Source: Mobula hypostoma (taxonomy: Eukaryota). From it: 64,000 nt of DNA. The position numbers and the translations under genes are program-made. The notes beneath the pieces were generated by a model, which made no database searches, was not told the DNA's origin, and saw nothing but the letters and a program-made list of their open reading frames with translations. The stretch is taken from positions 11,470,001 through 11,534,000 of the forward strand of contig NC_086109.1 of the NCBI RefSeq assembly GCF_963921235.1. Direction: 5' to 3'. This document shows positions 14,734 to 58,100 of the stretch, in pieces; within the stretch, counting starts at the first letter, position 1, and every line of letters starts with the position of its first letter.

Positions 14734-14785
14734 TGTTCCAGTGATGGTTCTCAGTTTCCCGTGACTGTGTCCACAATATGCTCTT

Positions 14786-14950
14786 CTTCCTCTTTTTTTA
14801 AAAGAGATGTCGTGGATTGCACCATTTCCTCTTAAATTAGCAAATAGCTTTGCAATGTGATACAGAAAAAGGGAGATTAACAAATGTCCTTTTTCACATG
14901 CTACTGTGTATATTGTTACAAGTTTCCAGTTTGGGGAAACAGGAAGATGA
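14786..14950 (-). promoter_or_regulatory. Gene A proximal promoter motifs (PU.1/Ets-like GAGGAAG at 14786-14796; CAGGAAG at about 14940-14946)
   Basis: AAAAGAGGAAG about 55 bp upstream of the ATG on the minus strand; both motifs conserved in gene B (GAGGAAGTG 63567-63575; CAGGAAG about 63726-63732). Motif match only. Confidence 0.4.
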
Positions 14951-14969
14951 CTCTTAACTGAATATAAGT

Positions 14970-15918: not shown

Positions 15919-17255
15919 AAGTACACACAGAGGAAAGAGGAGCTGCTAAAAAAACAGCATTACCTTCACCCTACACAAAATGCTGTAAGAACTCAGCAGA
16001 CCAGGCAGCGTCCATGGAAATGAGTAAAAAGTTGATGTTTCAGGCTGAGACCCTTCATCCAGACTCAAGATTAAGGGTCTCTTTTCTATGGATGCTGCCT
16101 GGCCTGCTGAGTTCCTCCAACATTTTGTGTGAGTTGCTTGCATTTCCAGCGTCTGCATGTTTTCTCTTATTTGTGGTTCTCTTCATCCTTACTGTTTCAG
16201 TGGCAGGATGGACAATATTCAGCATCTGAGTCACTGCTATCTGGAAGGAGGTACTGTAGCCTTGGGTCCCACACCACCAGCTTCAGGAACAGTAATGAAC
16301 GCTCAACCATCAGGCTCCTGAACCAGTGTGGATAACTTCACTCACCACAACACTGAACTATTCCGCAACCTGCTGATTCACTTTCAAGGACTTTACAACC
16401 CATACTTTCAATATTATTTATTTTTCAAGGACTTTGCAAACTATGCTCTCTCTATCCATTCTTTTATTTATATATTTTTTATTTGCACAGTTTGTCTTTA
16501 TGTGCACATTGGTTGTTTGTCTTTGTGTGTAGTCTTTTATTGACTCTATTGTGTTTCTTTGTATTTACTGCAAATGCCTGCAAGAAAATGAATCTCAGGA
16601 TGGGAAATGGTGACCTATTCATACTTTGATCATAAATTTACATTGAACTTTGATATATTGCAAAGATGGAACTGAAGCAGGACATATGACTCACAGTATG
16701 TCGTCAACTATCAGTAACCCTGACATCTTCTTGTTGACAGCCGGCACAGATGAATTTCGGGGGGATGTATGCTTGACCCACTGCTCTATTCTCTCTAGGC
16801 TTGTGTATGTGGCTAGGCACATACATCCATAAATTCGCAGACTACGCTACTGTTGATGTGACTTGATAGAGGTGTACATGATGATAAGAGACGTAGATAG
16901 AGTATCTACAAGTGTTCTCCACTCCCCTGAGCCATCCCACCAATCGCTGAAATATCATGTTAAATTTTAATACATGCAACACAGAAAAGTTGCTGGTGAA
17001 CGCAGCAGGCCAGGGAGCATCTCTAGGAAGAGGTACACTGAAGAATTTAAAACCTTTTTGCGTTTTTAAATTTTATTAGTTTATGAAAACCGTTTAAGGT
17101 CCCTCTGATGTTACCTCCATCAGAGGTAACATCAAAAACTTAAGTTTTCTTGTTATGCTTTATGTCGTCCATCACTGCCATTTTCTATCCTTCGTGCATT
17201 CCTTTTGCACTCTGTTCCAAAGATGAGGAGACCTATCCCAGTTGCAGTCCAATTA

Positions 17256-31372: not shown

Positions 31373-34011
31373 TATAGATTTGCTGAGTAAGCCCACAGAA
31401 AAGTGAACCTCAGGCTAAATATGTCGACATATATGCACTTTGATAACAAATTTACTTTGAACCTTGCTATCTAAAGCAGAGGTTGATAGGTTTTTGATCA
31501 GTATGGCCATCAAAGGTTACAGGAAGAAGGCAAGAGAATAGGATTGGGAAGGAAAATAAATCAGACTTGTTTGAATGGTGGATCGAACTTGATGGACTGA
31601 ATGGCAGAATTTTACCCAATGAGTTAGGTCTTTAGAGACTTACCAGTGACACAAGGGAGACGTACAGTAGATGCTGGAAATTTTAAACAACACACAGAAA
31701 ATGGAGTAAGACCTCAGAAGGCCAGGCAGTGTCAATGGAGGGGAATGAACAGTTCACATTTCTGATGGAGAACCTTCATCACACCTGGAAGGAAGGGAGC
31801 AGAAACCAGAAGAGAGGAGGAGCAGAGACTGGCAGGAGGAGTCCAGGTGGAGGGGAAGTGGGATTGAAAGGGAATGATGTGAGAAGCTCGAGGGTGATAG
31901 GTAGAATAGATAAAGGGCTGAAGGAGAAGTAATCTGATAGGAGATGACAGTGGACCATCATATTAAGGGAAGCGGCTGGCGACTCAGGGGGAGATGATGG
32001 GAAAGGGAGGGAAAGAGAAGGGCTAAGACAGCCATTAGAGTGAGAAGATGGCCTTCCAGTATGCATAGTGACCCCATTTGGAATCTTCTATTGAATCCTG
32101 AAACTTCTGTTCAGCTTCATCGCTGAGAGGTTCAGGTCTGTACAATGCAGATTTACCGATTTTTGCTCCTGATTCTGGCCTACTAGTTCTTCTATCTCCC
32201 CAGTTCTAAATCACACCATAGTCTTATAGTTACGGCTACACCCTCTCACACATCCCTGTTTGTCCCTAAGGTTGTCTGTACACCTCCCCGCCAACATGTC
32301 TGATTCTTGTTGGTTCCCCTGGTGGTGCATTAATGGGCTCCTAGAGCGGGTGTTGCTCCACAGGTCCAGTGTTCTCGTGGGCTCTGACTGCAGCTCCTAT
32401 TGTAGACAGACAGAATTCACACACACTCTGGGTTTACCTTCAGAGCAAACTTCCTCTTTATTCCAAGCCAGCCTCAACAAGGCAGTCACTCATCCGGAAG
32501 GAATGCTCCCCAATTCAAAGTTTTCATTCTTCTTACAGTGTTTTTTATCTATCTTTCCCTTCACTCTCTCTTCCCCACATGTGTAGTGTATTCATAGCGA
32601 GGTAAGCCTTTTGCAATGTCAAGCTTCAGTGTCTGTGTGCTCTGTGAGCAATCAAGTTTGGGTACTTTGTTTTATTTTAATTACAAAAATATGTTTACTG
32701 CAAATTTATAATTCTACAATACTACAAAACAGAGACAATGCAATGAGTAACTCGAACTAAATTAAAATGTTTCCAACACGGTCTGTGATATATTTATCCC
32801 CTGCAGTGCTGAATAATCCTAGAACCCCTCCATGGTAGCCGAGGACACCGAGTGACTGTTCTCCACGGGCACAGATGTACCCCCAGGAGATTGTCAGCCT
32901 GTCAGCCTAGGCTGGTAACCAGGCATCAGTTTCCTGTAGTTCAACTTCAGGCTGGAGCTCATGGTTTGGATCAAATTTCAACATTCAGGATTTAAGTTTA
33001 TTTGTCACACGCACATTAAAACATAGAGTGAAATACTTCATTTGTGTTAAGAACCAACATACTCGAGATTGTGCTGGGGAGGGATAAGTTGGCAGTGTGT
33101 TGGGGAATCGGAAAGTAGACGCTAGCAGTGTGTTGGGGTCTTATGAAGAGTTTTAGCCCAAAACATTGACTGTCTGCTCCTCTCCACAGACCCTGCCTGT
33201 CCTGCTCAGTTCCTCCAGCATTTTGTGTGTGTTGCCAGTGCATCCTTTCCCCTTCCCAAACTCACTGCTATCTGCCACCTCCCAATATACTGACAACTCC
33301 CCAACAATACACTGAATACTTCTCACCAACAAACTGACAGAATCTCCTTCTCCCCTCCACAACCCTGTAAACTCCCTCCTCCCAACACACTGACAACTTC
33401 CACTATTCCTTTCCCAACACACTGCCAATTTCCCTCACCTCTCCCCAATACCGGAAAAAGCTTGCCTTTTCTTTCCCCACCCCCCGCAACTTGGCAACTC
33501 CCTCCACCTCAACTTACCCCTCCCCAACGCACCACCAACTTCCAATTCCCAGCACCCTGGCAAATTCATTTTCCCCCCTCCTCAATGCCAACTACTCCCT
33601 CCCAACACATCATGAGCTTCTCTCTGCCCCACCTCCTCAACACTTTGTCATCTCCATTATCCTGAAAGCATTCTCTCAGCCCAATCCACTACCCCACCCC
33701 CCAGCAACTACCAACCCAACCGCAAGCACCAACTACCAGCCATCCCTCCACCCAACTCAACAGTCCCCCAGCCTTGGGCTCCATGCAACCTTGTCTTGCC
33801 TACAGGTCTCATCAAGCCTGTTGTTGTTGAACACCCCTGAGCTTGTTCAAGGACAAAGAGGGATGAAGAACAATGTGGCCACCAGCTGCTTGCACCTGCA
33901 CCAGTCCAACACAGCCCCACAGAATGCTGTCATGGTTGAGGGTTTGTGGGAAACAGCTGCACTAAAACAAAGAAACGTTCACCCAACTGTATTTGCGATG
34001 TTTTCTAGGTT

Positions 34012-34017
34012 TTTATT
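34012..34017 (-). terminator. AATAAA polyadenylation signal for the gene B membrane isoform
   Basis: tttatt on the + strand, about 35 nt downstream of the TGA at 34053. Confidence 0.55.
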
Positions 34018-34052
34018 GGAGCTTGAATTAAATATTATTAGTGGGCAACCAC

Positions 34053-34184
34053 TCAATACACTACAGTTTCTGAGTAATGTTGTGTTCTGGCATTTTCAGG
34101 AGAATGTTGAACAGGAAGATTGATGTGCATGTTTTCCATGTGATCTCTGCATTGCTTCACACTGGCATACACCACAGGCGTTTC
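34053..34184 (-). CDS. Gene B terminal cytoplasmic exon with ITIM VVYASV and truncated second ITIM
   Basis: Branch point CTAAC, pyrimidine tract and catacag|GAA (phase 0); encodes ETPVVYASVKQCRDHMENMHINLPVQHSPENARTQHYSETVVY*. Confidence 0.75.
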   Translation of the reverse strand, partial: ETPVVYASVKQCRDHMENMHINLPVQHSPENARTQHYSETVVY

Positions 34185-37100
34185 CTGTATGGTAAAGTGA
34201 GAAATATAGTTAGTGGTGGACTGTTGACAGGAGTGTGAACTCAGAAAATGGCAGAAGAGATCATCAGTGAGAAGAATGCGAGAGTAAGTAAACCAACACA
34301 GAGTACGTAAACAAACCCTAAGAGCTTTTCTTACGTCTATAAAGAGAAAATAAATCTCTGTGAACATAGAAAGTGAGCTTGGGGAAATGCCACGGGGAAT
34401 GAGTAAACACCATCTAGGACATGGTCTCTTCTGCATACTACATTTGGGGAGGAGATGAGGATACTGAAGACCCACCCTCAAAAATTTAGGAACAGTTTCT
34501 TCCCCTCTGCCTTGTGACTTTTGGGTGGTTCGTAATCCCATGAACACTACCCTGTTACTAATACAAGCGGTTTTACAGATGCTGGAAATCCAGAGCAACG
34601 CACAGAACCTGCTAGATCAGCGGCCCCCAACCACCGGGCCGCAAAGCATGCGCTACTGGGCTGTGAGGAACCGATATGATTTGGCGATAGGAGTCAGCTG
34701 CACCTTTCCTCATTCCCTGTCATGCCCACCGTTGAGCTTGAACACACGCGAGGTCATTACCCGCACGTCATCCGTGTCAGCGCGGGAAGGAGATCAACTC
34801 CTCGAGCTTGCAAATGACGGCGGGCTGAAAAGTATGTTTGACATAACATCTCTGCCAGCATTCTGGATCAAAGTCAAGGCTGAATATCCTGAGGTAGCCA
34901 CAAAAGCACTGAAAACGTTGCTTCCATTTCCAACATATCTCTGCAATGAATGCAACGAAAACTAAATTGTGGAATAGACTGGACATAAGGAACCCCCTTC
35001 GAGTATTGCTGTCTCCCACCACCCCTCGATAGGACCGTCTTGTTGCAGGAAAACAAGCCCAGGGCTCCCCCTGGTTCAGCGATATTGGTGTATTGCAATG
35101 ATTTTATATGTTTATACGGGGAAAATATGTGCTGTGTGTTTAATATTCAAACGTTACTTAAAATGTTATGATGCTATTGACTTATATAACCATATAACAA
35201 TTACAGCACAGAAACAGGCGATTTCTGCCCTTCTAGTCTGTGCCGAACGCTACTCTCACCTAGTCCCACCGACCTGCACTCAGCCCACAACCCTCCATTC
35301 CTTTCCTGTCCATATACCTATCCAATTTTTCTTTAAATGATAATACTGAACCTGCCTCTACTGGAAGTTCGTTCTACACTTACTTCAAGCTCCCCTGACA
35401 ATTGACTTATCGCTATATTCATGCGAGGAAAATATGCGCTGTGTGTTTAATATTAAATTCGTTAGATAAACCCATTTAGAAGGGAAATTGAGTGTATTAG
35501 CCACTTATCACCTATATTGCGTTCGTGATTAACACCCCCCCCAGAACAGAATAGCCAAAAGCGAATTATAGAAAAAATCAGCAAGTACACGAATGCGCAA
35601 AGTGTGCATGCGCACTGGTGCCCGCGCAAGGCTTCATGGTCATTGTAGTCTTTCAAGGGGGTAAACCCAACGTTTTTGACTGTTACTCTTGTTCGTTGGC
35701 AACCCTACCGCACCCAGCCCTCCCCCGCCGGTCGGCCGGTCCGCAGTGCGAAAAAGGTTGGGGACCCCTGTGCTAGAGGACCTCAGCAAGCCAGTCAGTA
35801 CTGACAGACAGGAAGAAAGAGTCAACATTACAAACTGAGACCCCTCATCAGTGCTGGAATCTCAGATCCATCTTCTTCAGATAACCATAAAAACAAATTT
35901 AACCATGGAGTTTGTTCAAAGAGAAACATTAAAACCCCTCCCCCACACAAAAGTCACATCATGCAGATGGCAAGAACATTAAACCAAAAAACCCCTCATA
36001 AAAAAACTAACATATTGCGTGAAACGGCGACGAGAACTAATGGGCAAAAAACAGAATATTAAAACCATAAAACTGAAAGAGCCACAGTCTGTAAGGGCAA
36101 TTTCTGAAACCAGAATAGTGGTAACACCAGAGCGTTCTGTACAGAATACCAAATTAATCTACTGCACTGCAATGTTAAACCCATGCTAACCAACCAAGAT
36201 GTCCACCTGAATTAGTCCCATTTGCCGCCATTTGGCCCATATCCTATTCGGCCTTTCTTATTCATGTACCAGTCCTAATGTCTTTTAAATGTAATTGCAT
36301 CTGTCTCTACAGTTTCCTCTGGCAACTTTTTCCATATACCCACCACCCCCTGTAAGAAGAAGATGTCCTTCAGTTCCCTTTTAAACTTTCCCTTCTCTCA
36401 TATTAAATCTATTCTTTTAATTCCCCTACCCTGGGGAACAGAAATTACCTCGCTGTACTTGTTCACATGACAATAAACTTCACTTGGAGTTACAAAACAA
36501 AATAAAATTGTGTAAATGTCTGTACCTATTGAGAAACAGGATGGCTTCGTCTGCTTTTGAACTCCTTCATTTAGCTCCTGGTTTGCTGCTTTCATCACTT
36601 CCTTTGTACCACTTTCAAAGAAAAACATTCTTGTTCATTCTAGGTATAACCACAACACTTGTATCATCTTACTGGAGCTTCCAACCATCCGGCAGAGGTA
36701 TTGATTTTGTAGAAACATGCAACAAAGAAGCTGCTGGGATCTCAATGTTGTGCCAACTTTTTAACCTACTGCAAGCCCATTCTACCCCTCCCCCTCCCAC
36801 ATAGGCCTTCATTTTTCTTTCATCCATGTGCCTATCTAAGAATCTCTCGAATGTTGTGAATGCATTTGTCTCTACCACCACCCTGGCAGTGCATTCCACT
36901 CCCTGTATGAAAAACTACCTCTGATATACCCCCCAAACTTTACTCCAATCACCTTAAATGTGTGCCTTCTTGTATTAGACATTGTCATGCTGGGTAATAG
37001 GGTCTGGATTCCACTCCCATCTATTTCCCTTGTCACCTTATACATCTCTATCAAGGTGTTGTCTAACCAGTGCTTTGCAAATGTATAAACTGGTTGCTTT

Positions 37101-40100
37101 GGAGACGAGGCAAATGGTCTGAATTTGTTAAAGGCGTCTCAGAGAGGAGAGGAATTTTTAAGCCGTCATCTTTCTACTTAACTGAACTGAACTTCTCAGT
37201 CTTGTCTCCTACCTGAGTATAATGATGGCAGTAATGAGCAGCAGGAAGAGAGCTGACAAGGCAACTGCAAGCAGAACATGCCATTGGGATGGTCTTGGCT
37301 TCCTGCAGAATATGACAAAGACATTGACAGATCTAGTCTAACGGGCATGTTCAAACTTTCTCCTTCTCCAGTATTGCCCTCTATTTTTTTTTGATCTGTT
37401 AAGTAGAAATATGATGTAGATTTGAACACATGTGCCTCTCACTCAATATCAGCAAGATCAAAGATATTATTATTGACCAGTAGAGGAAAACTGGAAGTCC
37501 ATGAACTAGTCCTCGTCAAGGGTGTTACAGATTTCTTGTTACAATTTCAAAGGATCTGTGCCATTGCAAAGAAAGTGTGGCAGCGCCTTTACTTTCTTAG
37601 ATGTTTGTGAAGGTTTGCATGTCATCTAAAACTTTACAAGGACGATTCTGGGAATGGAAGTGTTATCATACAAGGAATGTTTGATAGCTTTGGGTCTGTA
37701 GTAGCTGGAATTTAGAAGGATTTGGGGGATCTTATTGAAACCTTTTGTATGTTGAAAGGCCTAGACAGAGTAGATGCGGAAAGGATGTTTCCCATAGTGG
37801 GGAAGTCTCGGACAAGAGGGGAATCAATTTAAAACAGAGGCTGCATGTGACAGGTGAGACCAGGTGATCACCTTTTACCTCTTCCTCTTAGCACTTCCCA
37901 GACTGTAACTTAATTCCCCCTGTCTCTCACCACATCTGATTTCTCCTTCCCATTTCCCCCACCTTCTTATCCTGGCTTCTTCCTCTTTCCTTTCCAAACC
38001 TGAGGATGGTTCTTGATCAATAAAGTCAACTGTATATCCCCCCATCCTCCAAAGATTCTGTCTGGCCTGCTGTGTTCCTGCAGCATTTTGTGTGTGTTGC
38101 TGCAAATAATCCTGTTTGTACTTGAGGAAACACAAAGGAATTAGACAATCCAACTATAAATTTGTTCCTGCTACGATCCCTTGTCAATTACATAATTCTA
38201 CCAAAGGAAAAGGATTGTTTCTGTTAAGAGCTCGGTATAAATGGAGTCAAGTAATCCTGGATTCACGCCATTAGGGTTCAGAAAATGCTCTCTGATCAAT
38301 AGTTTTATCACCAACTAGCAATGACATAACTGTATTACTAGGTCGAGGTATCTTCTAAGCTGATGGCATTAAAATCAATTTCTCCAACTTCATGTTGGAC
38401 ACTTACATGACATGAAATTTGTTGTTTTGTGGCAGGAGTGCAGTGAAAAGACATAAAATTACTCTAAATTACAAAAATTAATAAATAACATGATCGCAGC
38501 AAAGCCAAATTCTAGCAAATTCTCCCCCCCTTTACCCGTTCTTGATTTTTCCACTCTAGTTTCTAATATTTTTTCCTCACCTGCCTATCACCTTACACTA
38601 CGTGTCCTCCTCCCACACTTTCTTCCATGATCCACACTCCTATTTGATCAGGTTCCTTCTTCTCCAGCCCTTTCCCTTTTCTAATTATCACCTCCCAGCT
38701 TCTTACTTCATCCCACACTTCCCTCCAACAACCTGGCATCACCTATCGCATTCTAGCTTGTCCCTGCTCCACTTCACCACTTCCTTATTCTCACATCTTC
38801 CCCCTTCCTTTCCAGTCCTGATGAAGAGTCTTGGCTCAAAAGGTTGACCCTTTATTTATTTCCTTAGATTCTGCCTGACCAGCTTCTTCCTCCAGCATTT
38901 TGTGTGTGTTTCACTGTATTACTGGTAAAATTGCATTTCACCATCTTTGCCATTCACCATGAGTACTTTTCAGAATACTGCATCTCTGAGGTAAATGTGA
39001 GCTGTCCCGTGAGCGACCGGTGAAGTGTTGGAAACTGATTTTGGCTAATTATTTAGATGGGCATGTACAAAGCCTAGTACATATGTTTACAGATGACATT
39101 ACAACAGGTAATATCATAGATAGTGAAGATGGTTATCAAGAACAACAATTATTGGCTAGACTAGTGGGAATGGCAAATGTAGTTTAGTACAGATAAGCTG
39201 TGGCATTTCGGGAACACAAATGAAGGCAGGACACTCATAGTGAAAGATGGGGCTCTGGGGAATGTTGTAGCTGAGAGGGTCATAGGAGTATAAGTAGATG
39301 ATTCATTGAAAGCGTTGTCACGTGTTGGTGTGGTGTTGGAGAAGCGGTCTGGCATGATGTCCTTCATCAGTCATGGCATTAATATAAGTTTCTGAATGTT
39401 ATATTGCATTAAACAAGATTTTAGTAACGGAGTTTTCTGTACAGCTTTAGTCACCATGCTGCAGGAAAGATGCCTCTAAGCGGAAAATAGTAGAGGACAG
39501 ATAAGATTTACAAGCATGTTGCTTGGACTTGGGTAACTGAGCTACAGAGATATTTGTCAGGCTAGGATTTACTACCTTGGAGCATAGGAGAATGAAGGGT
39601 GACCTTATGGAGGTGTATAAAATCATGAGGGATATCAACAAGGTAAATGCACACAGTTTTTTTCCTGCCAGAGTTGGGGAATAGAGGGCACAGGAAAGAG
39701 TTGAGTGATTACACAGGAAGATTTTTGTTGAGGTGAGTTAAGATTCTACTTTTTCGCTCAAAGTGTGGTCAATGTATGGAAGAGCTGTCAGAGGAAGCGG
39801 TTGTTGAAAATGTAATTCAAGTAGTTATTGAGTACTTTGGTTGAATGTTTACCATGGAAAAGGATATTGAAGACCAGGGAATCAGTGCTGAGTGTATAAA
39901 TATGCTAGGTATTTAGATGTCAAGGAGGAAGAAGTGTCGGGCCTCCTACTGAGTATTAAGGTGGAAGTTCCCAAGGCCTGATGAGATTTACCCCAGGTTA
40001 TTGAGGGAGGCAAGAGAGGAATTGCAGGGTCTTTGATCAGTAGCTTTCAGAATCAGAATGATGATCACCGCATGTGTCATGACATTTGTTAACTTAGCAG

Positions 40101-43100
40101 CAGCAGTTCAACGCAATACATAATATAGAAGAAAAAAATAAAAATAAATAAGTAAATCACTGATACCTGTAGTATACATATAATGAATAGATTAAAAATT
40201 GTGCAAAAACAGAAATAAAATATATTGAAAATGTGAGGTACTGTTCATGGGTTCAATGTCCATTTAGGAATTGGATGGCAGAGGGAAGAAGCTGTTCCTG
40301 AATCACTGAGTGTGTGCCTTCAGGCTTCTGTACCTCCTACCTGATGATAGTGAGAAAGTGGCATGCCCTGGGTGCTGGGAGTCCTTCATAATAGACACTG
40401 CCTTTCTGAGACACCGCTCCTTGAAGATGTCCTGGTGCAGTATCTTCTCTAGCCGCAGCGACATCCCAGAAAACTGGCATGTGGCTAATGTTGTACCTCT
40501 GTTTAAGAAAGGAACAAGGGAAAAATCCTGGGAATTATACTCTGGTGATTCTCATATCAGTTGTGGGAAAATTGCTGGATAAAATTCTCAGGGATAGGAT
40601 TGTAACCCTCTCACCGAGCTCATAAACAAACTTGGCTCGTCGGCTAACTCTGCTCACAGCCATGTGACTCAGTGGTGAGCAGGCCACCTTCCAGAAGAAA
40701 CACACATTGAGGTCGGTATGATTTGGTTCAACCAAACAGGAAAGTTGGAATGTTTCAGGGAAGAACGTGAATTGTAGTGAACGCTGTATAAATACTGCCC
40801 CATGCAAAGTTTTCATTCACTCCTAAAATAACGGATAGTACACTGGCATAAAGTTACAAAGAAAAATGTATTTATGAATATTTCAACCTTAATAAACAGT
40901 TAACAGGAAAAGAAAACAAAAATACAGTTAAACCAGCCAAAATGTGCACATCGACATCGGATTTCATTTCTGAAGTACTCGGGATGCTTCACTTTGATTA
41001 CTCACGGGCTGAGTCTACGTTGTGCGTGAAAGACACCAGCCACAGTTCGACCTTCCGTCAAAGACTATTTTGAATGAACTGGCTAACTCAGGAGTGCTGT
41101 CACTTCCTCCTCTGAACCATTCCTCTGCACAGAGCACTTCTTACAACGGGATCTCTCCTTCGAGCGACATTCTCCGGTCACCATTCCTCGTGCTCCGCTT
41201 TGCAGCTCATCCCAAAAAGACCCCAAATCAGACTAAAGTTCTGTAGAAATCTGATCCTGTCTAGCTCTCTCGAATCCTCCATAACATGCCACTTGTGCAA
41301 TGTATTGGTAATGTAAGGTCTGTTTGATGTAATAGTCTGGTACACTGAGATGTGCCAAATGAAAGTATATTGGGCAGCTGGGTTAGAGGTGGGTGACAAT
41401 GGAGACGAATGGCAGGAAAATGGGGAATGACAGATAGGTAACCTGCTCTTTATATACAAACAGACTTTAACCTAAAGCTGGAAAATCCAACATTGAGTTG
41501 TGCAGGATTGCAAAAAACATAGATGAAAGGTGATATTTTGTTTTCTTGAGGGTGAGGTGGACGTTGGTGGAGAGGGCCACAAATACCATCAGGTTTCTGT
41601 CCACTATCTTAGAGAAAGTCTAAAATCTCCCAGCTCCGGAGCTCCTGGGTGGGGGGACACGGCCACAGGGAGAGCTGGGGGGGGGGGTGTAGAGTCTGGG
41701 GGGGGTGCAATGTCCGGTGGGTGTGCAGTATTCGGAGGGGGGTGTGCAGTGCCCGGGGGGGGGGGTGCAGTGTCCGGGGGGGGTGCAGTGTCCAGAGGGG
41801 GGTGTGCAGTGTTCAGGGGGGGGTGCAGTGTCCGGGGGGGGTGCAGTGTCCGGGGGTGTGCAGTGTCCAGGGGGGTGCAGTGTCCGGAGGAGGGGTGCAG
41901 TGTCCGGAGGGGGGTGTGCAGTGCCCGGGGGGGGGGTGCAGTGTCCGGGGGGGTGCAGTGTCCGGGGGGGGGGTGCAGTGTCCGGAGGGGGGTGTGCAGT
42001 GTCCAGGGGGTGTGCAGTGTCCGGGGGGCTGCAGTGTCCGGAGGGGGGTGTGCAGTGTCCAGGGGGTGTGTAGTGTCCGGGGGGGGGTGCAGTGTCCGAA
42101 GGGGGGGTGCAGTGTCCGGAGGGGCGGTGCAGTGTCCAGAGGGGCGGTGCAGTGTCCAGAGGGGGGTGTGCAGTGCCCGGGGGGGGGGTGCAGTGTCCGG
42201 GGGTGTGCAGTGTCTAGGGGGGGGTGCAGTGTCCGGAGGGGCGGTGCAGTGTCCAGAGGGGAGTGTGCAGTGTCCGGAGGGGGGTGTGCAGTGTCCAGGG
42301 GGTGTGCAGTGTCCGGGGGGGTGCAGTGTCCGGAGGGGGGGTGCAGTGTCCAGAGGGGGGTGTGCAGTGCCCGGGGGGGGCAGTGTCTGGGGTGGGAATG
42401 CACCAAAATGGGGAAGATTCAAACAAGAGGGCATGGGTTGAGAATTAGAGGACAAAAGTTTAGGGGTAACATGAGGGGCAACTTCTTTACTCAGAGAGTT
42501 GGAGCCGTATGGAATGAGATTCCAGCAGAAGTGGTTGAGACAGGTTCTATGTTGTCCTTTAAAGTTAAATTGGTAGATATATGGACAGGAAAGGAATGGA
42601 GGGTTATGGGCTGAGTGCAGGTCGGTGGGAATAGGATAGGGTAAGAGTTCGGCACAGACTAGAAGGGCCGAGATGGCCTGTTTCCGTGCTGTAATTATAT
42701 GGTTATATGGTTATATGCCACTGGGCAGATAGTTACAACACATTACCAAGACAAATGTAACTGGCTGACACAACATTCGTAAGTTGGACAAAATGGCTCC
42801 TTAACTTTTGCTGAGGCCGAAACACTCTGACTAACAGGACACACTGCTTTTGCAGAAAATTGCTAAAATAAAAATACCTCAGAGCATAGCAGTAGAAATC
42901 TTAAACAGGGCATTACAGTCTCCTCCCTCCAAAAAAGGTCATGTCTTCATGACTTTGTAAGCCTTTGGAACTTATTAAACCATTATTAATAACACAGTAT
43001 TTAAATGAAGTTTGTGATTTTAGGATCCTCAATCCATTTGTAAATAGAGATAACGTATCTCACTATTAGAATTGACACCACACTCTGCTTCCCAGGTGCA

Positions 43101-46100
43101 TCATATGCCAGTCTATCTCGGGGTTTTCTGGCTCTCTGAGAACTCCTTATTTCAGCTTCAGCTTCTGCAGCTTCAGACACTCCTCGTTAATGAGGGGTTG
43201 CCCCCACCCCTCCCAGTCTGTCACTTGTATCTTCTAGAGACTCAGTTCCCCCTGCCCCCTGAATGAACTCAGCTGTCTTCAGTTTAAGCAGGCGCTACTG
43301 GGCATCTTCAACCACCACTGGTGCTAATCGGCAAGATCTCCCTTGGAAAAGGGTGTCCTCTGTCACTCTAGCTCCTCCTTCAGGACTTAACATGACATGC
43401 TTAGACTGGGTGTACCACACAGTTCCCTTTATATGCTGATAGTTCTGCTTCAAAGGAACTTGCACCTTCTCAAAAGCAGCCCTGAACACTGGGTGAATGG
43501 ACAGGCTTTTCAAAAAATGCTTTCCATTTCTCCCCTTGCATGCTCCCACGAGCCCTCTAAAAAATGGGAGTATTTGATCCCACAAGAATGGAAGTTTCAC
43601 CTTTTACAACTGGATCCCAGTAGACTAATACTAGCATATCAATAGTCTCAGTTACTCCAACATCAGCTTCTAAAAACTCCAGTTTCAATGACAAGTAACC
43701 ATTGCCAGTGTATACTAACAGTTTAGCAACTCTATTCCCGACTCCCCCATGGTCAATGCACCAATCAGAACTGTGCTGGAACTCTCTGACTAGCCTGTGT
43801 TGGAACAGCTACTGGAATCCTCCAGAGGCTCAATATCATCTGCTTGACTGGCCTCCCTCCACCACCCCAAACATTCCCTTTATTTTATTTTTTATATATT
43901 TTTCCTGCATTGTGAGCTCACTGTGTCTGAAGTGGGTACTTCCCTCGTCATGTACAACACAAACCTGTCCAGCCTTCCTCAACGTCTCATGCATTGAAGC
44001 GTTTCTCGGGGAGAAAATAGACAAAAATAAGTAGAAACAGATAATCCTACAGTAGGTCCACCACAAGTCACATTGGGTGGGACTACAGCTAGAGGTCATG
44101 GGTTTAATGTGAAAGGTGAAACGTTTAAGGAGATATACTGTCTTCATGTTGGTTCTTTTTCTGCAGCTTCCCCAGCGGTCATCTGGGTCAATAGCTGTGA
44201 AATCACTGGTCACTTATATTATGGAGCTAGAGCTGTCCTGGGGATACTGAGATCTATCACACTGGTTCCACAGTAAAATTAACTCAATGCTGACAAAATC
44301 CCATTCAGGTTGTAATTATCCCTTACAATATGGGACACTTGACATCTCTTGACGCTCTGAAATACATGGAAACATCCAGTTCTGGATCCTTAATCACCCC
44401 TGACATTAACTGTTATTCCTCTGGTGGATGTACCTTCTGTGGGTCAGATCCTGATCTGTTGGAATTCCTTCTCCACAGCTCTCTGGCCCTCTCTTTCATT
44501 CTCACTCTAAAGGCTTGTTAAATCCCACCAATTGTTGAGTTTTTGATCACATGTACCTTACGTCTCTACATGTGACTCAATGACAGATGTCAGACAATGC
44601 TGCTGCGCATGGCCTTTTGCCTTATCAATCAACTTGAAGCAGCTGTGGAAATGAAATTTGTTGTTGTTTTATTACAATGGATTGCTCAATAAACTTGATA
44701 AAATCCATCTGTTTTATTCACTCTGGAATATTTTAACTAACATAATTTGGAATAGTTGTGCTGGGTTTTAAGCAGTATTTCATACATTAAAAGCAAAATA
44801 TTGCATCATTTTGAGAGCAGCTTATGAGTCCAATCAAAACACACACAAAATGCTGGAGGAACTCAGCAGGTCAGGCAGTATCTATGGAGAGGAATACAGA
44901 CTCGACATGTCTGGCCGACACCCTTCATTGGTCTCAACCTGAAATATTGAATCTTTATTCCTTTCCGTAGATGTTGCCTGACCTACTGAGTTGCTCCAGC
45001 ATTTTCTGTGTGTTTCTCTGCATTTCCAGCACCTGAAGAATCTCGTGTTCAAGTCAAAATATTTTTTATTGCTTGGGTGAATTTTGAATCTTTAGAAGCA
45101 GCTGCAATTGTTGCACTGATTCACCTGTGAATTTACAACAGGCAGTAGATGCTGGAAGCTGGAGCAATAAGCTATTTACTGGAGGCACACAACAGGTTGA
45201 GCTGCATTTGTGGTGTGGAAAGATGCCGTCGACATTTCAGGTTGAGACCCTGCACAAGGACCGATCTGTCTGTGTTGTGGGTTCTGCTTCATATCAGCCT
45301 GTCTAGAAAAATAGAAAATCCAATGTTAGGAATTGAGAGGTGAGAAGAAGCAGCAAAGATGATGATATTCCTCTCCAGAAAACAGCAGTGATAATTTTTT
45401 TATGTGGGTGCAGGAATCGTTCAGTAGGGACTCTACCGTGGTGGGTGTTGGTGCTGTGAGTGTTGAATAGGGTCATATCATTCCGTATTTGCCTGGGGGA
45501 AACTGTCAATGTCCATGGCTGTAGTGTAATGGTATAGTGGGTGTTGTCTGAGCTGGAAGTAGGGTGGAGGGGTGGAGGATTGTGATTGATTGCTTCAGTA
45601 GTGGAAAGTGAGGTGCCACCAGGAATGAAAGATTACCTTTATTGGATGCATGTATATAAAAACATTAAAAAATTACAGCGAAATATGTGATTTGCAGCAA
45701 TGAACAAGACAGTCCAAGGATTGTGCTGCGGTCACCCCACAAGTGTCATCATGAGTCTGGAGCCAACATAGCATTCACACTCCTCATTAAAACTAACACG
45801 TGGGAGGAAGCAGTTATGTTTTGTAACTCTAAAGCATAAAAATATTTGAAAGGGAACACGGAGATTTTTGCTTTAAGGGAGGCTTTCAGTCATGACCTGG
45901 TGGACTGAAAATAATAACTTGGGATAAGGAGATGGCTGATGAACTAACTGAGTATTTTACATCAATCTTCACTGTGGAAGTCACTAGCAGTATGCCTGAT
46001 GTTGTAGTGTGTGAAGGAAGAGAAATGGGTGCAGTTCATATTACAAGAGAGGTGTTCAAAAAGCTGAAGGACCTAAAGCTACATAAGGCATAGAAAACGT

Positions 46101-52100: not shown

Positions 52101-55100
52101 ATGGATGCAACGTTTTCAGTGCTTTCGTGGCTATCTCAGGGTATTTAGCCTTGACTTTGATCCGGAATGCCGGCAGAGATGTTACGTCAAACATACTTTT
52201 CAGCCCGCCGTCATTTGCAAGCTCGAGGAGTTGATCATCTTCCCGCGCTGACATGGATGACACGCGGGTAATGACCTCGCATGCATTCAAGCTCAACAGT
52301 GGGCGTGGCAGGGAATGAGGAATGGTGCAGCTGACTCATATCATTTCATATCGCCAAATCATATCGTTTCCTCGCAGCCCGGCAGCACATGCTTTGCGGC
52401 CCAGTGGTTGGGGACTGCTGTTCTAATGTGTGTCCTTTGAATGACACCTTCAGCCATATTTTGGCCATTTAACCATGTGTTTCTCCTCTGTTATTTCACT
52501 CAACTTATTGGTTTGCAGTTACAGACACTTAGGAGAGATTTTGAATGAATTAACCTGGACTGATCTTGAGCTTCTACTTTTAATTGTGAATCACACGGCA
52601 TGGAAGTGAAAAGATTGGAAAAAAAATCTACCTTTGGAAAGCTGTCATGCAATGTATCGAAACAGTGCAAAGAAACAGAGCTCTAAGGAGTATCCAACAG
52701 GTCAGAGTCCAAAATTTTTGAATGATCAACTCATAGTTCCTAACAGATCAAGAAGATATCATTAGTTACACACAAAGTAGTTAATAAATGACACCAAGAA
52801 ATACATTTTATCTAGGTGTATATTATCAGTGACACTGAGAAATGCATATTATTAAATGTAATTTGTGGAAATGCATTTTATTAGCAAGTGACACTGAGAA
52901 ATGCATTTTATTGAAACAGTTGAAAGAGTCAGACCTCTGAAGAGTATCCATTGGATCACAGTCGATACCTGGTGAATTTTCAGCTCATGGTCACTGATGG
53001 ACAAAGGAAATTTAATTAACAACGCACAGAGAATTCTGTAACAGACACTGGGAAATGCCATTACACATGAAATCATCATTCAGTGTGATGTAGTGTTGTG
53101 GCACGGAGTATCGAGCAGTCTGATGGTTGAATGCTGATTCTCCAACTTATGTCCACATCTTGGAACCGTCGCACTGCCAGTGGAAGTGTGTGAAATTAAT
53201 GTTATATGCTCCAAACCACTGTGTAAAGAAAGAAAGAAAGAAATCTGCAAGTGAAGTCCATGCTATTGGATTCAAGTAACAGATGTTCATCAGTATTTCA
53301 GTTTGCATTTTCATTCTTTCATCTGCAGTTCCTATATAATCCATGTGGTCTAGAGGGACAAGGGCAGTAGATGCATGACAACAGAGCTACTCCCGAATCC
53401 CTTGAAGGACACACAGTGTTGTTCAGTCATTATCACCAGATCAGAATGGTGGGAATGCCCAACATTTCATTATTGTGGGAGATTGCTCGCTGCGTGAGCT
53501 ACAGCCATTCAAGTTTTCCAGGCCTGAGAGGGTGATCACCAGTTGGAGCCAGACACATTCACCAGTGAGTCTTCCAAACTCCTCATTCAAAATGGGAAGT
53601 TAGGAGCTGTGTGCCAAATGCTGGCCTTGTCCTTGATGCTTACATCCAGTAAATAAATAAGGTAACATTTGAGACATAATGCTGATAAAATGATTTAGAG
53701 CAAAAAGTTTCAATGTTTGTTACAGTAACAGAAGCCCATTTATGTTACCTCTGTGTGTGGCCTTCATCTTAATGATCTTCAACAATGGATTCAACTCAGG
53801 GTCCTGTATTCTTTACCCTTTTCTATCTTGTTCCCATGTTATACTTGAACACATCACAGTAACTGCAACTTTGCCCTTATTATCTGTCTGTTTTTCCTTA
53901 AATCTCACTACACATTGCATCTACTTGTATAGCAAATGCCCCAACTTCAGCTTTATCATTCCAGTTCCCATTCCCACTGGCAAGCTAGATTAAATCCTTC
54001 CCAGCAGTTGTAGCAAATATGCCTGCAAGGATATTAGTCCCTCCTGAGTTCTGGTGAAACCAATCCTTTCTGTACAGGTCATACCGTTCTTCAGAGGAAT
54101 CCTACTGTTCCAAAAAATCTGTAAACCTGCCTCCTGCTCCACTTCCTCAACCACTCATTTATCTGCCAAATCTTTCTATTCTTACCTTCACAGGCATGTG
54201 GCGCAGGCAGCAATCTAGAGATTACCACCCTGGAGGTCATGCTTTTCACCTGTCTACCTAACCCCCTATATTCTCTCTTCAGGACCTCCTCCCTTTTCCT
54301 CCCTATTGCATTGGTACCAATATGTACCACAACTTCTGGCGGCTCACCCTCTCCATTTAGAATATTGTGGGCCCAATCTGAGACATTCCTGACCCTGGCA
54401 ACAGGAATGCAGAATCCATCTGGGTGTCTTTTTTATGTCTTGAGTTCCCAACTGGCATAGTAACCCCCTATATTCTCTCTTAAGGACCTCCTCCCATTTC
54501 CTCCCTATTGCATTGGTACCACAACTTCCCCATTTAGAATATTGTGGGTCTGATCCAAGATATCCCTGACCCTGGCACTGGGAGGCACAATCCATCTGGG
54601 TGTCTTTTTTTATGTCTGCGGAACCTCCTGTGTGCTCCTCTGACTATGGAATTCCCTGTCACTACTGCACTCCTCTCCTTTACATTTGACCAACAAGGTG
54701 CAACACTTCACAATTGTCCGGGTTAAACTCCATCTGCCATTTGTCCATCATATCTGCAACTGAAAGTACTCATAGACTTTCAGCTTCTTCCTGCTGCAGC
54801 TGATAATCAGCTCTTTGGTTTTCTGAGGTTGAGTGAGAGATTGTTGCCCTGGCACCACTCAACCAGATTTTCAGTCACCCTTCTATAAGCCAATTTGTCA
54901 TCACTTTTGTTCCGGCCAACAACCAGTTGTGAGGTTTGTAAGCTTATAAATGGTAGCAGAGCCATACTTAGCCAAGCTCTCATAAGTATAATGTGAGTAG
55001 AGCAGGGGATAAGCATCCTCAGACAAGGGGAAATCTACAAGAGCCAATCAGCCTTCCACCAACTCGTAGGTCTTTGGGATGTGGGAAGCAACCGGAGCAC

Positions 55101-58100
55101 ATCAGGTGAAGACAAGGAAGACTCTACACAGAAAGCAGCGGAGATCAGGAGTAGATCCACGTTGGTGGAGCTGTGAGTCCACAACCGTCCGAGCTGCCCC
55201 ATTGTGCTGCTCCCAACACCTGACGTCCTGTGGCGTAACTGTGATGGTGAGCTAAGACAGCAATCTTAGTCTGCACGGGATATTTGAGTTGAAGGGCAGG
55301 TTTCCATGCCATATTAATCTCTGATACTATGATATCCCCAACTGACATATTATTTTCCTCTAACCTTTATATTGATCAAATTAAATGAAATGTATGATGT
55401 CAATTAAAGACACTTGTATTACAGCAGAATTATCAAACTGTGATCTTAATCAGTCAATAGTTATTAATTTGAAGATGACAGTTGAAATCTCACCTTTTGT
55501 TGTCTTTAGAATCTTCTGGTGTTTCTGATGTGAGATGTTAAAATAAACACGTTAAACCAATTGATAATCAATTACAGCACAAAATAACTTTAATCTTTGT
55601 CAACCTATAGGTTGGCATTGTGGTGGAGCAGCAGAACATTCAGATCTATTTACTGCATGTGCCGTGCATCGAAACAGACAGTGAAATGCATCGTTTTCAT
55701 TAACAAGCAGCACCCTGCAGGATGTGCTGAGAGCCAGCCCACAAGTGTTGCCACACATTCTGGCTCCAATACATGACACCCATAATGTTCAGCAGAACAA
55801 CACAGGACACAACATGCAAACAAGCAGCACATAAAGCAAGTCAGAAACGCACAACATCAACAGTAATATTATTTTGTGCTGAAGCAGGTGTGAAACCCTG
55901 AATCGCTTATTATTTCTGCTTCTTAGCTCCTTAAGTCAACTTATCTAGATCAGGAAGCAGAGAGTGATACAACACGGAGACAGATCCTTCAGCATGCAGT
56001 CAGGTCCTATTTAATTCTCCCTCTCTTTTCCATCAATTCCTTCCAAATTCTTACAAGGTGAATTTTACAATGGCCAGTTAAACTTCCACCTACCCCTATG
56101 GCTTTGGGATGCAGGAGGAAACTGGACCAATTGAAAGAAATAAGGCGAAGGCAAGGAAAGCTCCACACAGAAAGCACCAGAGATCAGGATTAAATCCAGG
56201 CTGATGGAGCTGTGAGTTCACAGCTGACGAGTTGCACCATTGTGCTGCTCCCAACTCATGAAGTTCATTGAACATAGAACATCAAACAGTACAGCACAGT
56301 ACAGGCTTCAGCCACGAAGCAGCCAACATAATCTCTGACCCTTCCATCCCTGGTCATTCTCGCTTCTCTCCTCTCCCATCAGGCAGAAGATGTAACAGGT
56401 TCTGAGCATGTACTACCAGGCTCAAGGACAGTTTTTATTCTGCTATTATCAGACCCTTGAGCAGACCTCCTGTACACTAAATGATGAACACTTGATCTCT
56501 CAATCTACCTCATCGTGGCCCTTGTAATTTATCTTGACTACATTTTCTTTGTGACTAGTACTATGTTCTGATTTCTTTTACAGCCTTGATGTGCTTATGT
56601 TTGGAATGATCTGCCTGGATGGTGCATAAACTATGTTTTTCACTGTCTGTTGGCACACATGACAATAATCAACCAATATCAATACCGAAAATAAACCAAT
56701 ATCAATCTCAAGAGTCTAGACACATGTGTAATAGTCAGTATGGAATTTCATCAGCAAAGATCAATAAGAAGACAAAAAAGATTCTGCGGATGCTGGAAAT
56801 ATTTAGTAATGCACACAAAATGGTGGGGGATCTCAGCAGATCCCTCTATGGAGGGAAATAAACAGTTCATGTTTCATGCTAATACTCTTCACCAGTCCCA
56901 ATGAAGCAACTTGGCTGGAAAAGTTGACACTTTCTTCCTGTCCACAGCTGCTGCCTGACCTGCTGAGTTCCTTCAGCATTTTGTGTGTGAAGATGAGGAA
57001 GAAGATAGAATTCAACCAAAAAGTGGTGAGCAGTCTGGACACAAAATAGGGAAAACCGAGAAGTATGAGGAGAAGGAAGATGGGTAGAAATAGAATGGAG
57101 GAAGATATAATACAGTGAGACAATAGGAACACAATTACACCATTTGGCCCGTCAAGTCTTCTCCACCATGCTGTCACAATTATTACCCTTCCCAACACCA
57201 TACTCCTGCTTTCTCCCCATTACCTTTGAAACCAAGAACCTCCACTTTAAATATACCCAATGATTTGGTCTCCACAGTCATCCGAGACAAAGTATTGCAA
57301 CTAGCTAAAGAAATTCCTCCTCATCTCTGTTCCAAAGTGGCATCCCTCTACGGAGTAGAAAGTCTGTAAAGACTGAAGATTTGCATGTTCGTAAGCACTA
57401 AATCACAGAAATTTTAGGTTGATTCATACCTTCAGAAATCTCCAGCATTTTAATCTGCACAATCTCAAAGTTAAATATGTTTGTTGCTCCACACCAGTAC
57501 TCTCCTTTATCTCCTTCGTTGGTCTGCTTTATGGTGACAGCAAATTCAGTGGAAGTGTTTATGATGATTGCTGGGTTTCTGCTGCTGTATTCAGAGCTGG
57601 CTATCACACTGCACCTATTTACAGAGGTTACTTTACACAAGAATTTCTCATATGATTTAAATCGCTGCTGATAGTGGCAGTGTAGGCTGGTGGCATTTTG
57701 CATCACACCCTTCACCGTGGTATTGCCTGCTGTCCATGAACCTGCTGGTAAATGAGAAGAGGAAGAAATGAGGGGTCTAACGTAGTGGGAATTGTGCTGA
57801 CAGAACCTTCAGTGCTACAGTTAGCTGAGGCTGTGTGGGAGGACTACTGACCATGAATGGGAGGGACCCCAGTAGAACAGGCCTTGCCAAGTCTGAGAGA
57901 TAATGCAAGAAGTTAAGAAGGCTAAAAGAAAGCATGAAATTGCTCCAGCAGACAAGCTGAAGGAGAATTGTAAGGGAATCTACAGGTATGCTAAGAGCAA
58001 AAGAATTGCAAGGGACAGAATTGGTCCTCTGGAACACCAGTATGTTAATCCACGTATGGAGCCAAAACAGATGGGGGAGATTTTAACTACATTCTTTGCA

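What the first reader, a model, noticed from the sequence alone, without database searches (positions are those of the whole stretch)
34038..34064. Nonsense codon sits inside the distal ITIM of gene B (VVY*VV)
The frame reads GTA GTG TAT TGA GTG GTT GCC CAC TAA TAA. Reading through gives V-V-Y-x-V-V, an exact (V/I/L/S)xYxx(V/L) ITIM, followed by AH and a double stop. One substitution (for example TCA to TGA) would restore VVYSVV. The proximal ITIM VVYASV (34158-34175) is intact. Established: tandem SH2 phosphatases (SHP-1/2) engage paired ITIMs. Inference: a recent loss-of-inhibition allele, a readthrough-regulated tail, or a consensus error.
Basis: partly seen in the sequence, partly recalled or inferred. 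Interest (0 to 1): 0.75.

Follow-up and report, generated by a model that had tools for sequence, protein, structure and literature searches.

The report
Stop codon in a dead ITIM tail
The stop codon does cut a conserved inhibitory signalling motif in this devil-ray immune-receptor cluster, but the exon carrying it is most likely a leftover of a broken neighbouring gene and not the working tail of gene B, so this is ordinary gene decay.

Summary
On the minus strand the frame reads GTA GTG TAT TGA GTG GTT GCC CAC TAA TAA (34064 to 34035). This follows an open 43-codon exon that starts at a good acceptor (34184) and holds an intact VVYASV motif.

Homology makes the stop meaningful. Five shark, sawfish and devil-ray relatives end ...SE[ST]V.Y-S-[TA]-[LVI]..., so the TGA sits where they all have Ser. 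A paralogue in the same genome (XP_062922428.1) must carry Ser, Leu or Phe at that codon.

- The window is Mobula hypostoma. Gene B has its own 3' end: a charged-TM exon (52632-52739) and a short tail (45176-45302).
- The ITIM exon and an uncharged TM exon (37213-37302) form a separate CMRF35/CD300-like 3' module with no leader, V or stalk exons of its own.
- Every upstream exon ends in phase 2, so no tested splice reaches the ITIM frame. The joins give ...IIILRRKKSS* or ...RKRLWCMPV*.
- A second conserved tyrosine is also lost (Y to H, 34125-34127).

Most likely this is a decaying relic in a birth-and-death receptor cluster. A stop inside an ITIM is a known route of ITIM loss in KIR evolution. 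The scan noted a similar tail loss in another receptor family of this genome (s1-141872), which I did not test. Interest is low.

The parts
34053..34055 (-). TGA nonsense codon at the Y+1 position of the former distal ITIM.
   Evidence: All five relatives have Ser here. The paralogue P0148 must have Ser, Leu or Phe here.
34056..34184 (-). Open part of the terminal exon in the ITIM frame (43 codons), preceded by the acceptor tttctcactttaccatacag.
   Evidence: Homologous to the tails of shark and ray CMRF35/pIgR-like proteins.
34158..34175 (-). Intact proximal ITIM, VVYASV.
   Evidence: It aligns with VTY[AS][TNA]V of the relatives.
34116..34133 (-). Degenerate central motif NMHINL. His (CAC, 34125-34127) replaces the Tyr of the YxN[VLM] motif that is present in all five relatives.
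   Evidence: The paralogue is inferred to keep Tyr here (position 20).
34035..34052 (-). Residual codons VVAH followed by TAA TAA, the original end of the reading frame.
   Evidence: The same V-V-A-H-stop is inferred for the paralogue.
34012..34017 (-). AATAAA polyadenylation signal, 18 nt after the double stop.
   Evidence: read directly from the sequence.
34317..34336 (-). Candidate 20-nt micro-exon (acceptor tttattttctctttatag, donor AGG|gtttgt). It links a phase-1 donor to the ITIM frame (xVRKALR-ETPVVY...). After the window's phase-2 TM exon it reads RRKKSS-stop.
   Evidence: This is an inference; there is no transcript evidence.
37213..37302 (-). Uncharged TM exon (KPRPSQWHVLLAVALSALFLLLITAIIILR), phase 2 in and phase 2 out. 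Reading through its donor meets TAG at once (37209-37211).
   Evidence: It is 72% identical over 29 residues to the TM of P0148 (75% over 28), and has HMM E=2.7e-6 against the shark CMRF35-like family.
55494..55524 (-). Gene B stalk exon (ETPEDSKDNK), phase 2 out. Listed as context.
52632..52739 (-). Gene B's own TM exon with an Arg in the membrane span (activating type), phase 2 in and out. Listed as context.
45176..45302 (-). Gene B's own short terminal coding exon (RQADMKQNPQ...VVCLQ*). Listed as context.
   Evidence: It is about 84% identical to the tail of M. birostris XP_072134949.1.

Best explanation
The exon at 34056-34184 and the uncharged TM exon at 37213-37302 are what remains of the 3' signalling module of a second gene. 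That gene was a CMRF35/CD300-like (single-V type) inhibitory receptor lying between activating gene B and inhibitory gene A in a Mobula hypostoma receptor cluster.

The ancestral tail carried three tyrosine motifs: a proximal ITIM, a central YxN and a C-terminal ITIM. In this copy three things have changed:
- The leader, V and stalk exons are absent.
- The TM exon no longer ends in the phase that leads into the ITIM frame.
- The central Tyr has become His, and the Ser codon after the last Tyr has become TGA.

The nonsense codon is therefore one of several lesions in a tail that is probably no longer translated as an ITIM tail. If the exons are transcribed at all, for example spliced to gene B's stalk exon, the predicted product is a tail-less membrane protein (...IIILRRKKSS* or ...RKRLWCMPV*), with the old ITIM sequence lying in the 3' UTR.

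Shown: the homology, the derived state of the stop and of the His, the lack of ectodomain exons, and the phase mismatch. Inferred: that the module is non-functional, and that the 20-nt micro-exon was the ancestral link.
For: - Species and neighbouring genes. P0158/P0168 (M. hypostoma XP_062922502-505) map to gene A's V1, V2 and TM exons at 95-99% identity in blocks that overrun the exon ends. M. birostris P0157 maps gene B as leader, V1, V2, stalk, charged TM and short tail.
- Family of the module. The TM exon is 72-75% identical to the TM of same-genome paralogue P0148 (XP_062922428.1). P0148 residues 453-565 match window 34188-33850 at 72.6% amino-acid identity, read in the other frame. Shark CMRF35-like molecules P0151, P0152 and P0030 share the TM and tail architecture. 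An HMM of them hits the TM exon (E=2.7e-6) and the tail exon (E=0.08) in the right order and strand.
- Tail homology. 15.6 bits against a maximum of 11.4 in 5000 shuffles. In A1 all five relatives have Y-S-[TA]-[LVI] at the stop position and Tyr at the window's His20.
- Paralogue. Threading P0148 onto the window DNA shows its codon at the stop position can only be Ser, Leu or Phe. Its inferred ITIM frame is open and keeps all three tyrosines.
- Missing exons. No CMRF35-type leader, V or stalk exon lies between 37.3 and 45.1 kb.
- Reading frames. The stalk, TM-act and TM' exons all end in phase 2, and every tested join to the micro-exon or the last exon misses the ITIM frame.
- No extra constraint. 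The coding part differs from the paralogue at least as much as the 3' flank does (at least 13.7% against at least 8.6%).
- Precedent. [quoted passage not shown] CD300 genes follow birth-and-death evolution with premature stops (PMC12447643).
Against: - Both exons keep good splice signals. The ITIM frame is open from the acceptor to the TGA, the proximal ITIM is intact, and a polyA signal follows. A young or still-used exon would look the same.
- Gene B's stalk exon is phase-compatible with the TM' exon.
- RefSeq models in Hypanus sabinus and M. birostris join one ectodomain to alternative activating and inhibitory 3' modules, so an alternative 3' end for gene B is conceivable.
- An unrecognised linking exon of length 3n+1 between 37213 and 34184 cannot be excluded. 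One candidate is 36012-36036 (SSRRRFTQY).
- No transcript data and no orthologous DNA could be obtained.
- The paralogue's state is inferred from a protein model read in another frame, not from its DNA.
Confidence: 0.6

Rival explanations
1. The tail is functional but truncated. The TM' and ITIM exons are used, either as an alternative 3' end of gene B or as part of an unrecognised gene. An unidentified linking exon restores the frame. The product is an inhibitory receptor with a single ITIM (VVYASV), and the TGA is a real, possibly recent, weakening of SHP-1/2 recruitment.
For: - The acceptor, ORF, proximal ITIM and polyA signal are intact.
- The stalk exon joins TM' in phase.
- A candidate 25-nt linker at 36012-36036 would give ...IIILSSRRRFTQY-ETPVVY....
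- Annotated relatives use alternative activating and inhibitory 3' modules.
- The five codons after the TGA encode the same residues (VVAH, then stop) as inferred for the paralogue, which fits a recent event.
Against: - The linker has no homology support.
- No database protein of 103-327 aa shares words with this tail.
- The central Tyr is also lost.
- The coding part is no better conserved than the flank.
- The module is of a different type from the inhibitory module used by the annotated isoforms (A-type).
Confidence: 0.17
2. The exons are transcribed as a tail-less isoform. Gene B's stalk splices to TM', then to the 20-nt micro-exon, giving ...IIILRRKKSS*. The old ITIM exon serves only as 3' UTR and polyA site, so the TGA has no effect on any protein.
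For: - The splice phases fit, and RRKKSS is a plausible stop-transfer sequence.
- The micro-exon has strong splice signals.
- The stop lies only a few nt before the last junction. By the established 50-55 nt rule, nonsense-mediated decay would not be expected.
Against: This is purely a sequence inference. There is no transcript or protein evidence.
Confidence: 0.13
3. The TGA is an assembly or consensus error, or one allele of a heterozygous site, and the real or alternative sequence has a sense codon.
For: It is a single-base difference from a Ser or Leu codon. Reads cannot be checked with these tools.
Against: - Substitution errors are rare in long-read chromosome-level assemblies (general knowledge, not tested here).
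- The stop is accompanied by other derived changes in the same module: the Y-to-H change and the phase mismatch. A single miscalled base would not explain these.
Confidence: 0.06
4. The stop is recoded by programmed readthrough or selenocysteine insertion, so the full VVYxVVAH tail is made conditionally.
For: The five codons after the TGA are in frame and end in a double TAA.
Against: - The context is TGA-GTG, not the UGA-CUAG context typical of vertebrate readthrough genes (established knowledge).
- No SECIS or any other Rfam element reaches threshold in 32500-37500.
Confidence: 0.02

Closest known systems
Shark CMRF35-like (CD300-like) molecules: Heterodontus francisci 'CMRF35-like molecule 7 isoform X2' (P0151), Pristiophorus japonicus 'CMRF35-like molecule 2 isoform X2' (P0152), and the second half of Heptranchias perlo XP_067863879.1 (P0030)
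   Same: They share an uncharged TM followed by a cytoplasmic tail with a proximal ITIM (VTY[AS]xV), a central YxNV and a C-terminal SETV.YSx[LIV]. The window's TM and tail exons align to them in the same order, with the motif residues invariant.
   Different: The window copy has no leader, V or stalk exons and no counterpart of the TNEQ...KFSKED segment. It has His for the central Tyr and a stop after the last Tyr.
Mobula hypostoma XP_062922428.1 (P0148), 'polymeric immunoglobulin receptor-like', a paralogue on the same chromosome
   Same: This is the closest relative of both exons. The TM is 72-75% identical, and the last exon plus 3' flank are at most about 89% identical in nucleotides (at least 37 differences in 339 nt). 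The inferred ITIM frame ends ...SETVIY[S/L]VVAH*.
   Different: It keeps a V domain and a stalk. Its codon at the stop position is a sense codon and its central Tyr is retained. The public model is a fused two-receptor prediction that reads the last exon in the non-ITIM frame, probably because it misses a micro-exon.
Short-tailed activating KIR derived from inhibitory KIR (Abi-Rached and Parham 2005, PMC2213150)
   Same: ITIM signalling was lost through a stop codon placed inside an ITIM, within a rapidly evolving cluster of paired receptors.
   Different: In KIR the stop hits the membrane-proximal ITIM, goes together with a gained charged TM residue, and the product is a working activating receptor. 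Here the TM is uncharged, the proximal ITIM is spared and the module appears orphaned.
Gene A of this window (M. hypostoma XP_062922502-505), with the H. sabinus X1 and M. birostris X3 inhibitory isoforms
   Same: The tail architecture is the same (ED.VTYSAV ... IYSNM ... SESVEYSALLFRS) and the genes lie in the same cluster.
   Different: They have a different TM and tail subtype (PQIWYILLPLLLG...). They are intact, annotated and joined to a two-V ectodomain.

Membership tests
CD300/CMRF35-like inhibitory receptor gene (single-V type) | Own leader and a V-set Ig exon with the family's Cys pattern, upstream of the TM exon | tested here: not met
   A family HMM and tblastn with four relatives find only the four V exons of genes A and B. 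Nothing is found between 37.3 and 45.1 kb. The one weak match, at 37331-37435, has E=15.
CD300/CMRF35-like inhibitory receptor gene (single-V type) | Uncharged TM segment homologous to the family's | tested here: met
   Exon 37213-37302: HMM E=2.7e-6, and 72-75% identity to the TM of P0148.
CD300/CMRF35-like inhibitory receptor gene (single-V type) | Cytoplasmic tail with proximal ITIM, central YxN and C-terminal ITIM, all intact | tested here: not met
   Only the proximal ITIM is intact. The central Tyr is His, and the distal motif is cut at Y+1.
CD300/CMRF35-like inhibitory receptor gene (single-V type) | One continuous reading frame across the TM, linker and last exons | tested here: not met
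   The TM' exon ends in phase 2. Its joins to the micro-exon or the last exon give RRKKSS* or RKRLWCMPV*.
ITIM, consensus (S/I/V/L)xYxx(I/V/L) | Six contiguous translated residues that fit the consensus | tested here: met
   This row is for the proximal motif. VVYASV at 34158-34175 fits.
ITIM, consensus (S/I/V/L)xYxx(I/V/L) | The distal motif is translated through Y+3 | tested here: not met
   TGA occupies Y+1 (34053-34055). Relatives have YS[TA][LVI].
Gene B (two-V pIgR-like receptor) as owner of the exon | Orthologous or annotated products of the two-V gene end in this tail | tested here: not met
   The M. birostris, H. sabinus and H. akajei isoforms end in the charged-TM short tails or in the A-type ITIM tail, never in this one. 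Gene B's own M. hypostoma annotation could not be retrieved.
Programmed stop-codon recoding (readthrough or selenocysteine) | Readthrough-prone context (UGA-CUAG) or a SECIS element in the 3' UTR | tested here: not met
   The context is TGA-GTG. No SECIS hit at E<=1 in 32500-37500.

The most novel reading that the evidence does not exclude
Gene B may be a three-way switchable receptor. One two-V ectodomain would be spliced to its charged-TM activating module, to an uncharged TM with a single-ITIM tail, or to a tail-less anchor. The TGA would then be a selected change that turns a paired-ITIM (tandem-SH2, SHP-recruiting) tail into a weaker single-ITIM tail. The annotated activating and inhibitory isoforms of one gene in Hypanus sabinus and Mobula birostris would be the ancestral form of this arrangement.
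Probability: 0.07. Interest if true: 0.55.

Novelty: new member of a known kind. Interest (0 to 1): 0.2.

Why it matters
If the main reading holds, this is one more example of birth-and-death turnover in a vertebrate paired-receptor cluster, here in a devil ray. An inhibitory tail is decaying beside a recently duplicated activating and inhibitory pair. It is useful for annotation: the ITIM exon should not be attached to gene B. It also flags that the public model XP_062922428.1 probably reads its last exon in the wrong frame.

It would matter more only if transcripts showed that the exon is used. That would point to graded inhibitory signalling produced by alternative 3' modules in cartilaginous fish.

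Tried and rejected
1. Search for database proteins with this tail. The ORF 34056-34616 with region 140-187 found no candidate. Only proteins of 103-327 aa were eligible, so this is weak negative evidence.
2. DNA of the paralogue and of orthologous loci. It was unavailable for M. hypostoma, M. birostris and H. sabinus because the files are too large or the protein is not on record. The paralogue's state was therefore inferred by threading its protein onto the window DNA.
3. A possible remnant of the start of a V exon at 37331-37435 (LTDQKKIEG..GES). tblastn gives E=4-6 and the family HMM gives E=15. This is not significant and was dropped as evidence.
4. Counterparts of the paralogue's juxtamembrane CAKLRQKMKTG and of the sharks' TNEQ...KFSKED segment between 37213 and 34184. 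No convincing match was found. PAVICK at 34798-34824 lies inside a repeat that also occurs at 51299-52425 and is taken as chance.
5. A mechanical scan for linking exons of length 3n+1. Of the 18 candidates listed, the 25-nt one at 36012-36036 looks most plausible, but it has no homology support.
6. Other copies of the tail or TM' exon in the window. None were found.
7. SECIS or other structured RNA near the stop. None were found. A SNORD115-like hit at 37134-37208 is below threshold (25.6 against 39 bits).
8. Alternative terminal exons of the M. birostris isoforms (NFKMYKSL..., QRE*) and gene A's tail exons. None map near 34-37 kb.

Full report
**What is at the coordinates**

The window is vertebrate DNA rich in CR1-type repeats. 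All relevant genes lie on the minus strand. Reading the minus strand gives a good acceptor, tttctcactttaccatacag|GAAACG, at 34184. It is followed by 43 open codons: ETPVVYASVKQCRDHMENMHINLPVQHSPENARTQHYSETVVY.

- TGA follows at 34055-34053, then GTG GTT GCC CAC TAA TAA, then AATAAA at 34017-34012.
- The bare pattern '[SIVL]xY-stop-x[IVL]' occurs 19 times in the six frames of the window. Only this one has an intact ITIM upstream in the same open frame.

**Which genome and which genes**

A profile-free search with the V2 exon of gene B and a follow-up search with the best two-V hit returned RefSeq 'polymeric immunoglobulin receptor-like' proteins of rays.

- Mobula hypostoma XP_062922502-505 (P0158, P0166-168) map to gene A's V1 (12923-13249), V2 (8534-8854) and TM exon (976-1095) at 95-99% identity, in blocks that overrun the exon ends. 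The window is therefore M. hypostoma and gene A is the inhibitory member. Its ITIM exons lie beyond the window start.
- M. birostris XP_072134949.1 (P0157) maps gene B as six exons:

| Exon | Coordinates |
|---|---|
| leader | about 63478-63519 |
| V1 | about 60698-61021 |
| V2 | about 57431-57745 |
| stalk | 55494-55524 |
| TM with an Arg in the span | 52632-52739 |
| short tail | 45176-45302 |

- The ectodomain block of B (53770-64000) is a duplicate of A's (5076-16173), at 84-94% identity. This agrees with s1-142950.

**What the ITIM exon belongs to**

About 2.9 kb upstream of it lies a clean TM exon, 37213-37302. It encodes KPRPSQWHVLLAVALSALFLLLITAIIILR, with acceptor ttctgcag and donor AG|gtagga. 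Neither exon has another copy in the window.

- Their closest relative is XP_062922428.1 (P0148), from the same 98.2-Mb M. hypostoma chromosome. Its TM is 72-75% identical, and its last 113 residues match window 34188-33850 at 72.6% identity, but in the other reading frame.
- P0148 is a 565-residue fused model of two single-V receptors.
- The same single-V architecture, with a proper tail, is seen in shark 'CMRF35-like molecules' P0151 (Heterodontus), P0152 (Pristiophorus) and the second half of P0030 (Heptranchias).
- A family HMM built from these hits the window's TM exon (E=2.7e-6) and tail exon (E=0.08) in the right order and strand. Apart from these it finds only the four V exons of genes A and B. 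There is no leader, V or stalk of this type between 37.3 and 45.1 kb.

**Is the stop inside a real ITIM?**

Yes, by homology.

- Alignment A1 of the 43 residues with the tails of P0151, P0152, P0030, gene A (P0158) and sawfish P0007 has invariant Y6, V9, E17, N22, S38, E39, V41 and Y43.
- All five relatives continue Y-S-[TA]-[LVI] and end seven or eight residues after the Tyr. The window has Y-TGA-V-V-A-H-stop.
- A profile of the five tails scores the window tail at 15.6 bits. The best of 5000 shuffles scores 11.4.
- Threading P0148's residues onto the window DNA (no gaps over 113 codons, at least 37 of 339 nt different) shows that its codon at the stop position (Phe in its annotated frame) can only give Ser, Leu or Phe in the ITIM frame.
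- The most parsimonious ITIM-frame reading of the paralogue is ETP[L/V]VYASVK...ENMYMNLPVQ...SETVIY[S/L]VVAH-stop, which is open throughout.
- The TGA is therefore derived, and so is His20 (CAC, 34125-34127), where all relatives and the paralogue have the Tyr of a YxN[VLM] motif.

**Can the ITIM frame be translated here?**

The stalk, TM-act and TM' exons all end ...AG|gt in phase 2, while the ITIM frame needs phase 0 at 34184. Explicit joins give the following:

| Join | Product |
|---|---|
| stalk to TM' | in frame |
| TM' to last exon | ...IIILRKRLWCMPV* |
| TM-act to last exon | ...AFQRKRLWCMPV* |
| reading through the TM' donor | ...IIILR* |
| TM' to micro-exon | ...IIILRRKKSS* |

- A 20-nt segment at 34317-34336 has strong splice signals and lies 132 nt upstream of the last exon. 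Its length (3n+2) is exactly what would link a phase-1 TM exon to the ITIM frame, reading xVRKALR-ETPVVY....
- P0148's TM exon ends ...KMKTG in phase 1. This probably explains why the public model of the paralogue is out of frame: it misses a micro-exon.
- After the window's phase-2 TM' exon, however, the micro-exon gives the RRKKSS* product shown in the table.
- A mechanical scan for a 3n+1 linker lists 18 candidates, of which one 25-nt segment (36012-36036) looks plausible but has no homology support.
- The coding part is not better conserved against the paralogue than the 3' flank (at least 13.7% against at least 8.6% minimal nucleotide difference).

**Interpretation**

The most economical reading (about 0.6) is a decaying 3' remnant of a CMRF35-like inhibitory receptor gene sitting between gene B and gene A. 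It has several lesions: missing ectodomain exons, lost frame continuity, the Y-to-H change and the TGA.

The alternatives are:
- a used but truncated single-ITIM tail reached through an unseen linker (about 0.17)
- a tail-less isoform that uses the old ITIM exon only as 3' UTR (about 0.13)
- an assembly error or heterozygous allele (about 0.06)
- recoding (about 0.02); the context is TGA-GTG and there is no SECIS

**Comparison with what is known**

Loss of ITIM signalling by a stop codon inside an ITIM is the documented origin of short-tailed KIR (PMC2213150). CD300 genes show birth-and-death evolution with premature stops (PMC12447643). CD300a needs intact ITIMs and SHP-1 for inhibition (PMC3418551). 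This finding is a new instance of a known kind of event, in a lineage where the family is only machine-annotated.

**Limits**

No transcript data, read pile-ups or orthologous or paralogous DNA could be obtained. All three word-index protein searches and the single representative search were used. Gene B's own M. hypostoma annotation was not retrieved.

Noticed in passing
window 45176-55524 and 976-1095; proteins P0155/P0002/P0153, P0157/P0159: RefSeq models in Hypanus sabinus and Mobula birostris join one identical two-V ectodomain either to a charged-TM short-tail module or to an uncharged-TM three-ITIM module, as isoforms of one gene. In H. sabinus two called genes share the same 3' end. 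In M. hypostoma the ectodomain block is duplicated, so the two outputs sit on separate genes B and A. Paired receptors made by alternative 3' modules would merit a transcript check.
   Followed up: partly
window 52632-52739: Gene B's TM reads WTLTCWILLRALFL, where M. birostris and Hemitrygon have WTLTRWILLGALFL and Hypanus has WTPIRWILLGALFL. The conserved membrane Arg is replaced by Cys, and a new Arg appears five residues later. This may affect adaptor pairing.
   Followed up: no
window 52861-53016: A second, degenerate copy of the charged-TM exon (ELKIHQVSTVIQWILFRGLTLSTVSIKCIS) lies about 150 nt upstream of the used one.
   Followed up: no
P0148 = XP_062922428.1 (M. hypostoma, same chromosome, outside the window): The public model fuses two single-V receptors over 70 kb and includes a repeat-like stretch (ELYIDFRSNGSPLHTLIINNSTV...). 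It reads its last exon in the non-ITIM frame through the region that matches the window's polyA signal. It probably misses a 20-nt micro-exon.
   Followed up: partly
window 41678-42380: A G-rich minisatellite with a period of about 20 nt (or 39 or 97 nt) and about 36 copies at about 80% match, consensus GGGGGGGGTGTGCAGTGTCC. It produces the long spurious ORFs on both strands.
   Followed up: yes
window 34613-35715 versus 51299-52425: An inverted pair of 1.1-kb repeat copies at 84% identity. One copy lies in the intron between the TM' and ITIM exons, the other just downstream of gene B's TM exon.
   Followed up: no
window 54100-54440 and 5400-5745: The LWYILVP match that looks like the start of a TM lies inside repeat-derived coding sequence (...HIGTNAIGRKREEVLKREYRGLGRQVKS...) at the duplication boundary. 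It is not an exon.
   Followed up: partly
window 15246-15387: A run of 142 N (gap or masked). It was left untouched.
   Followed up: no
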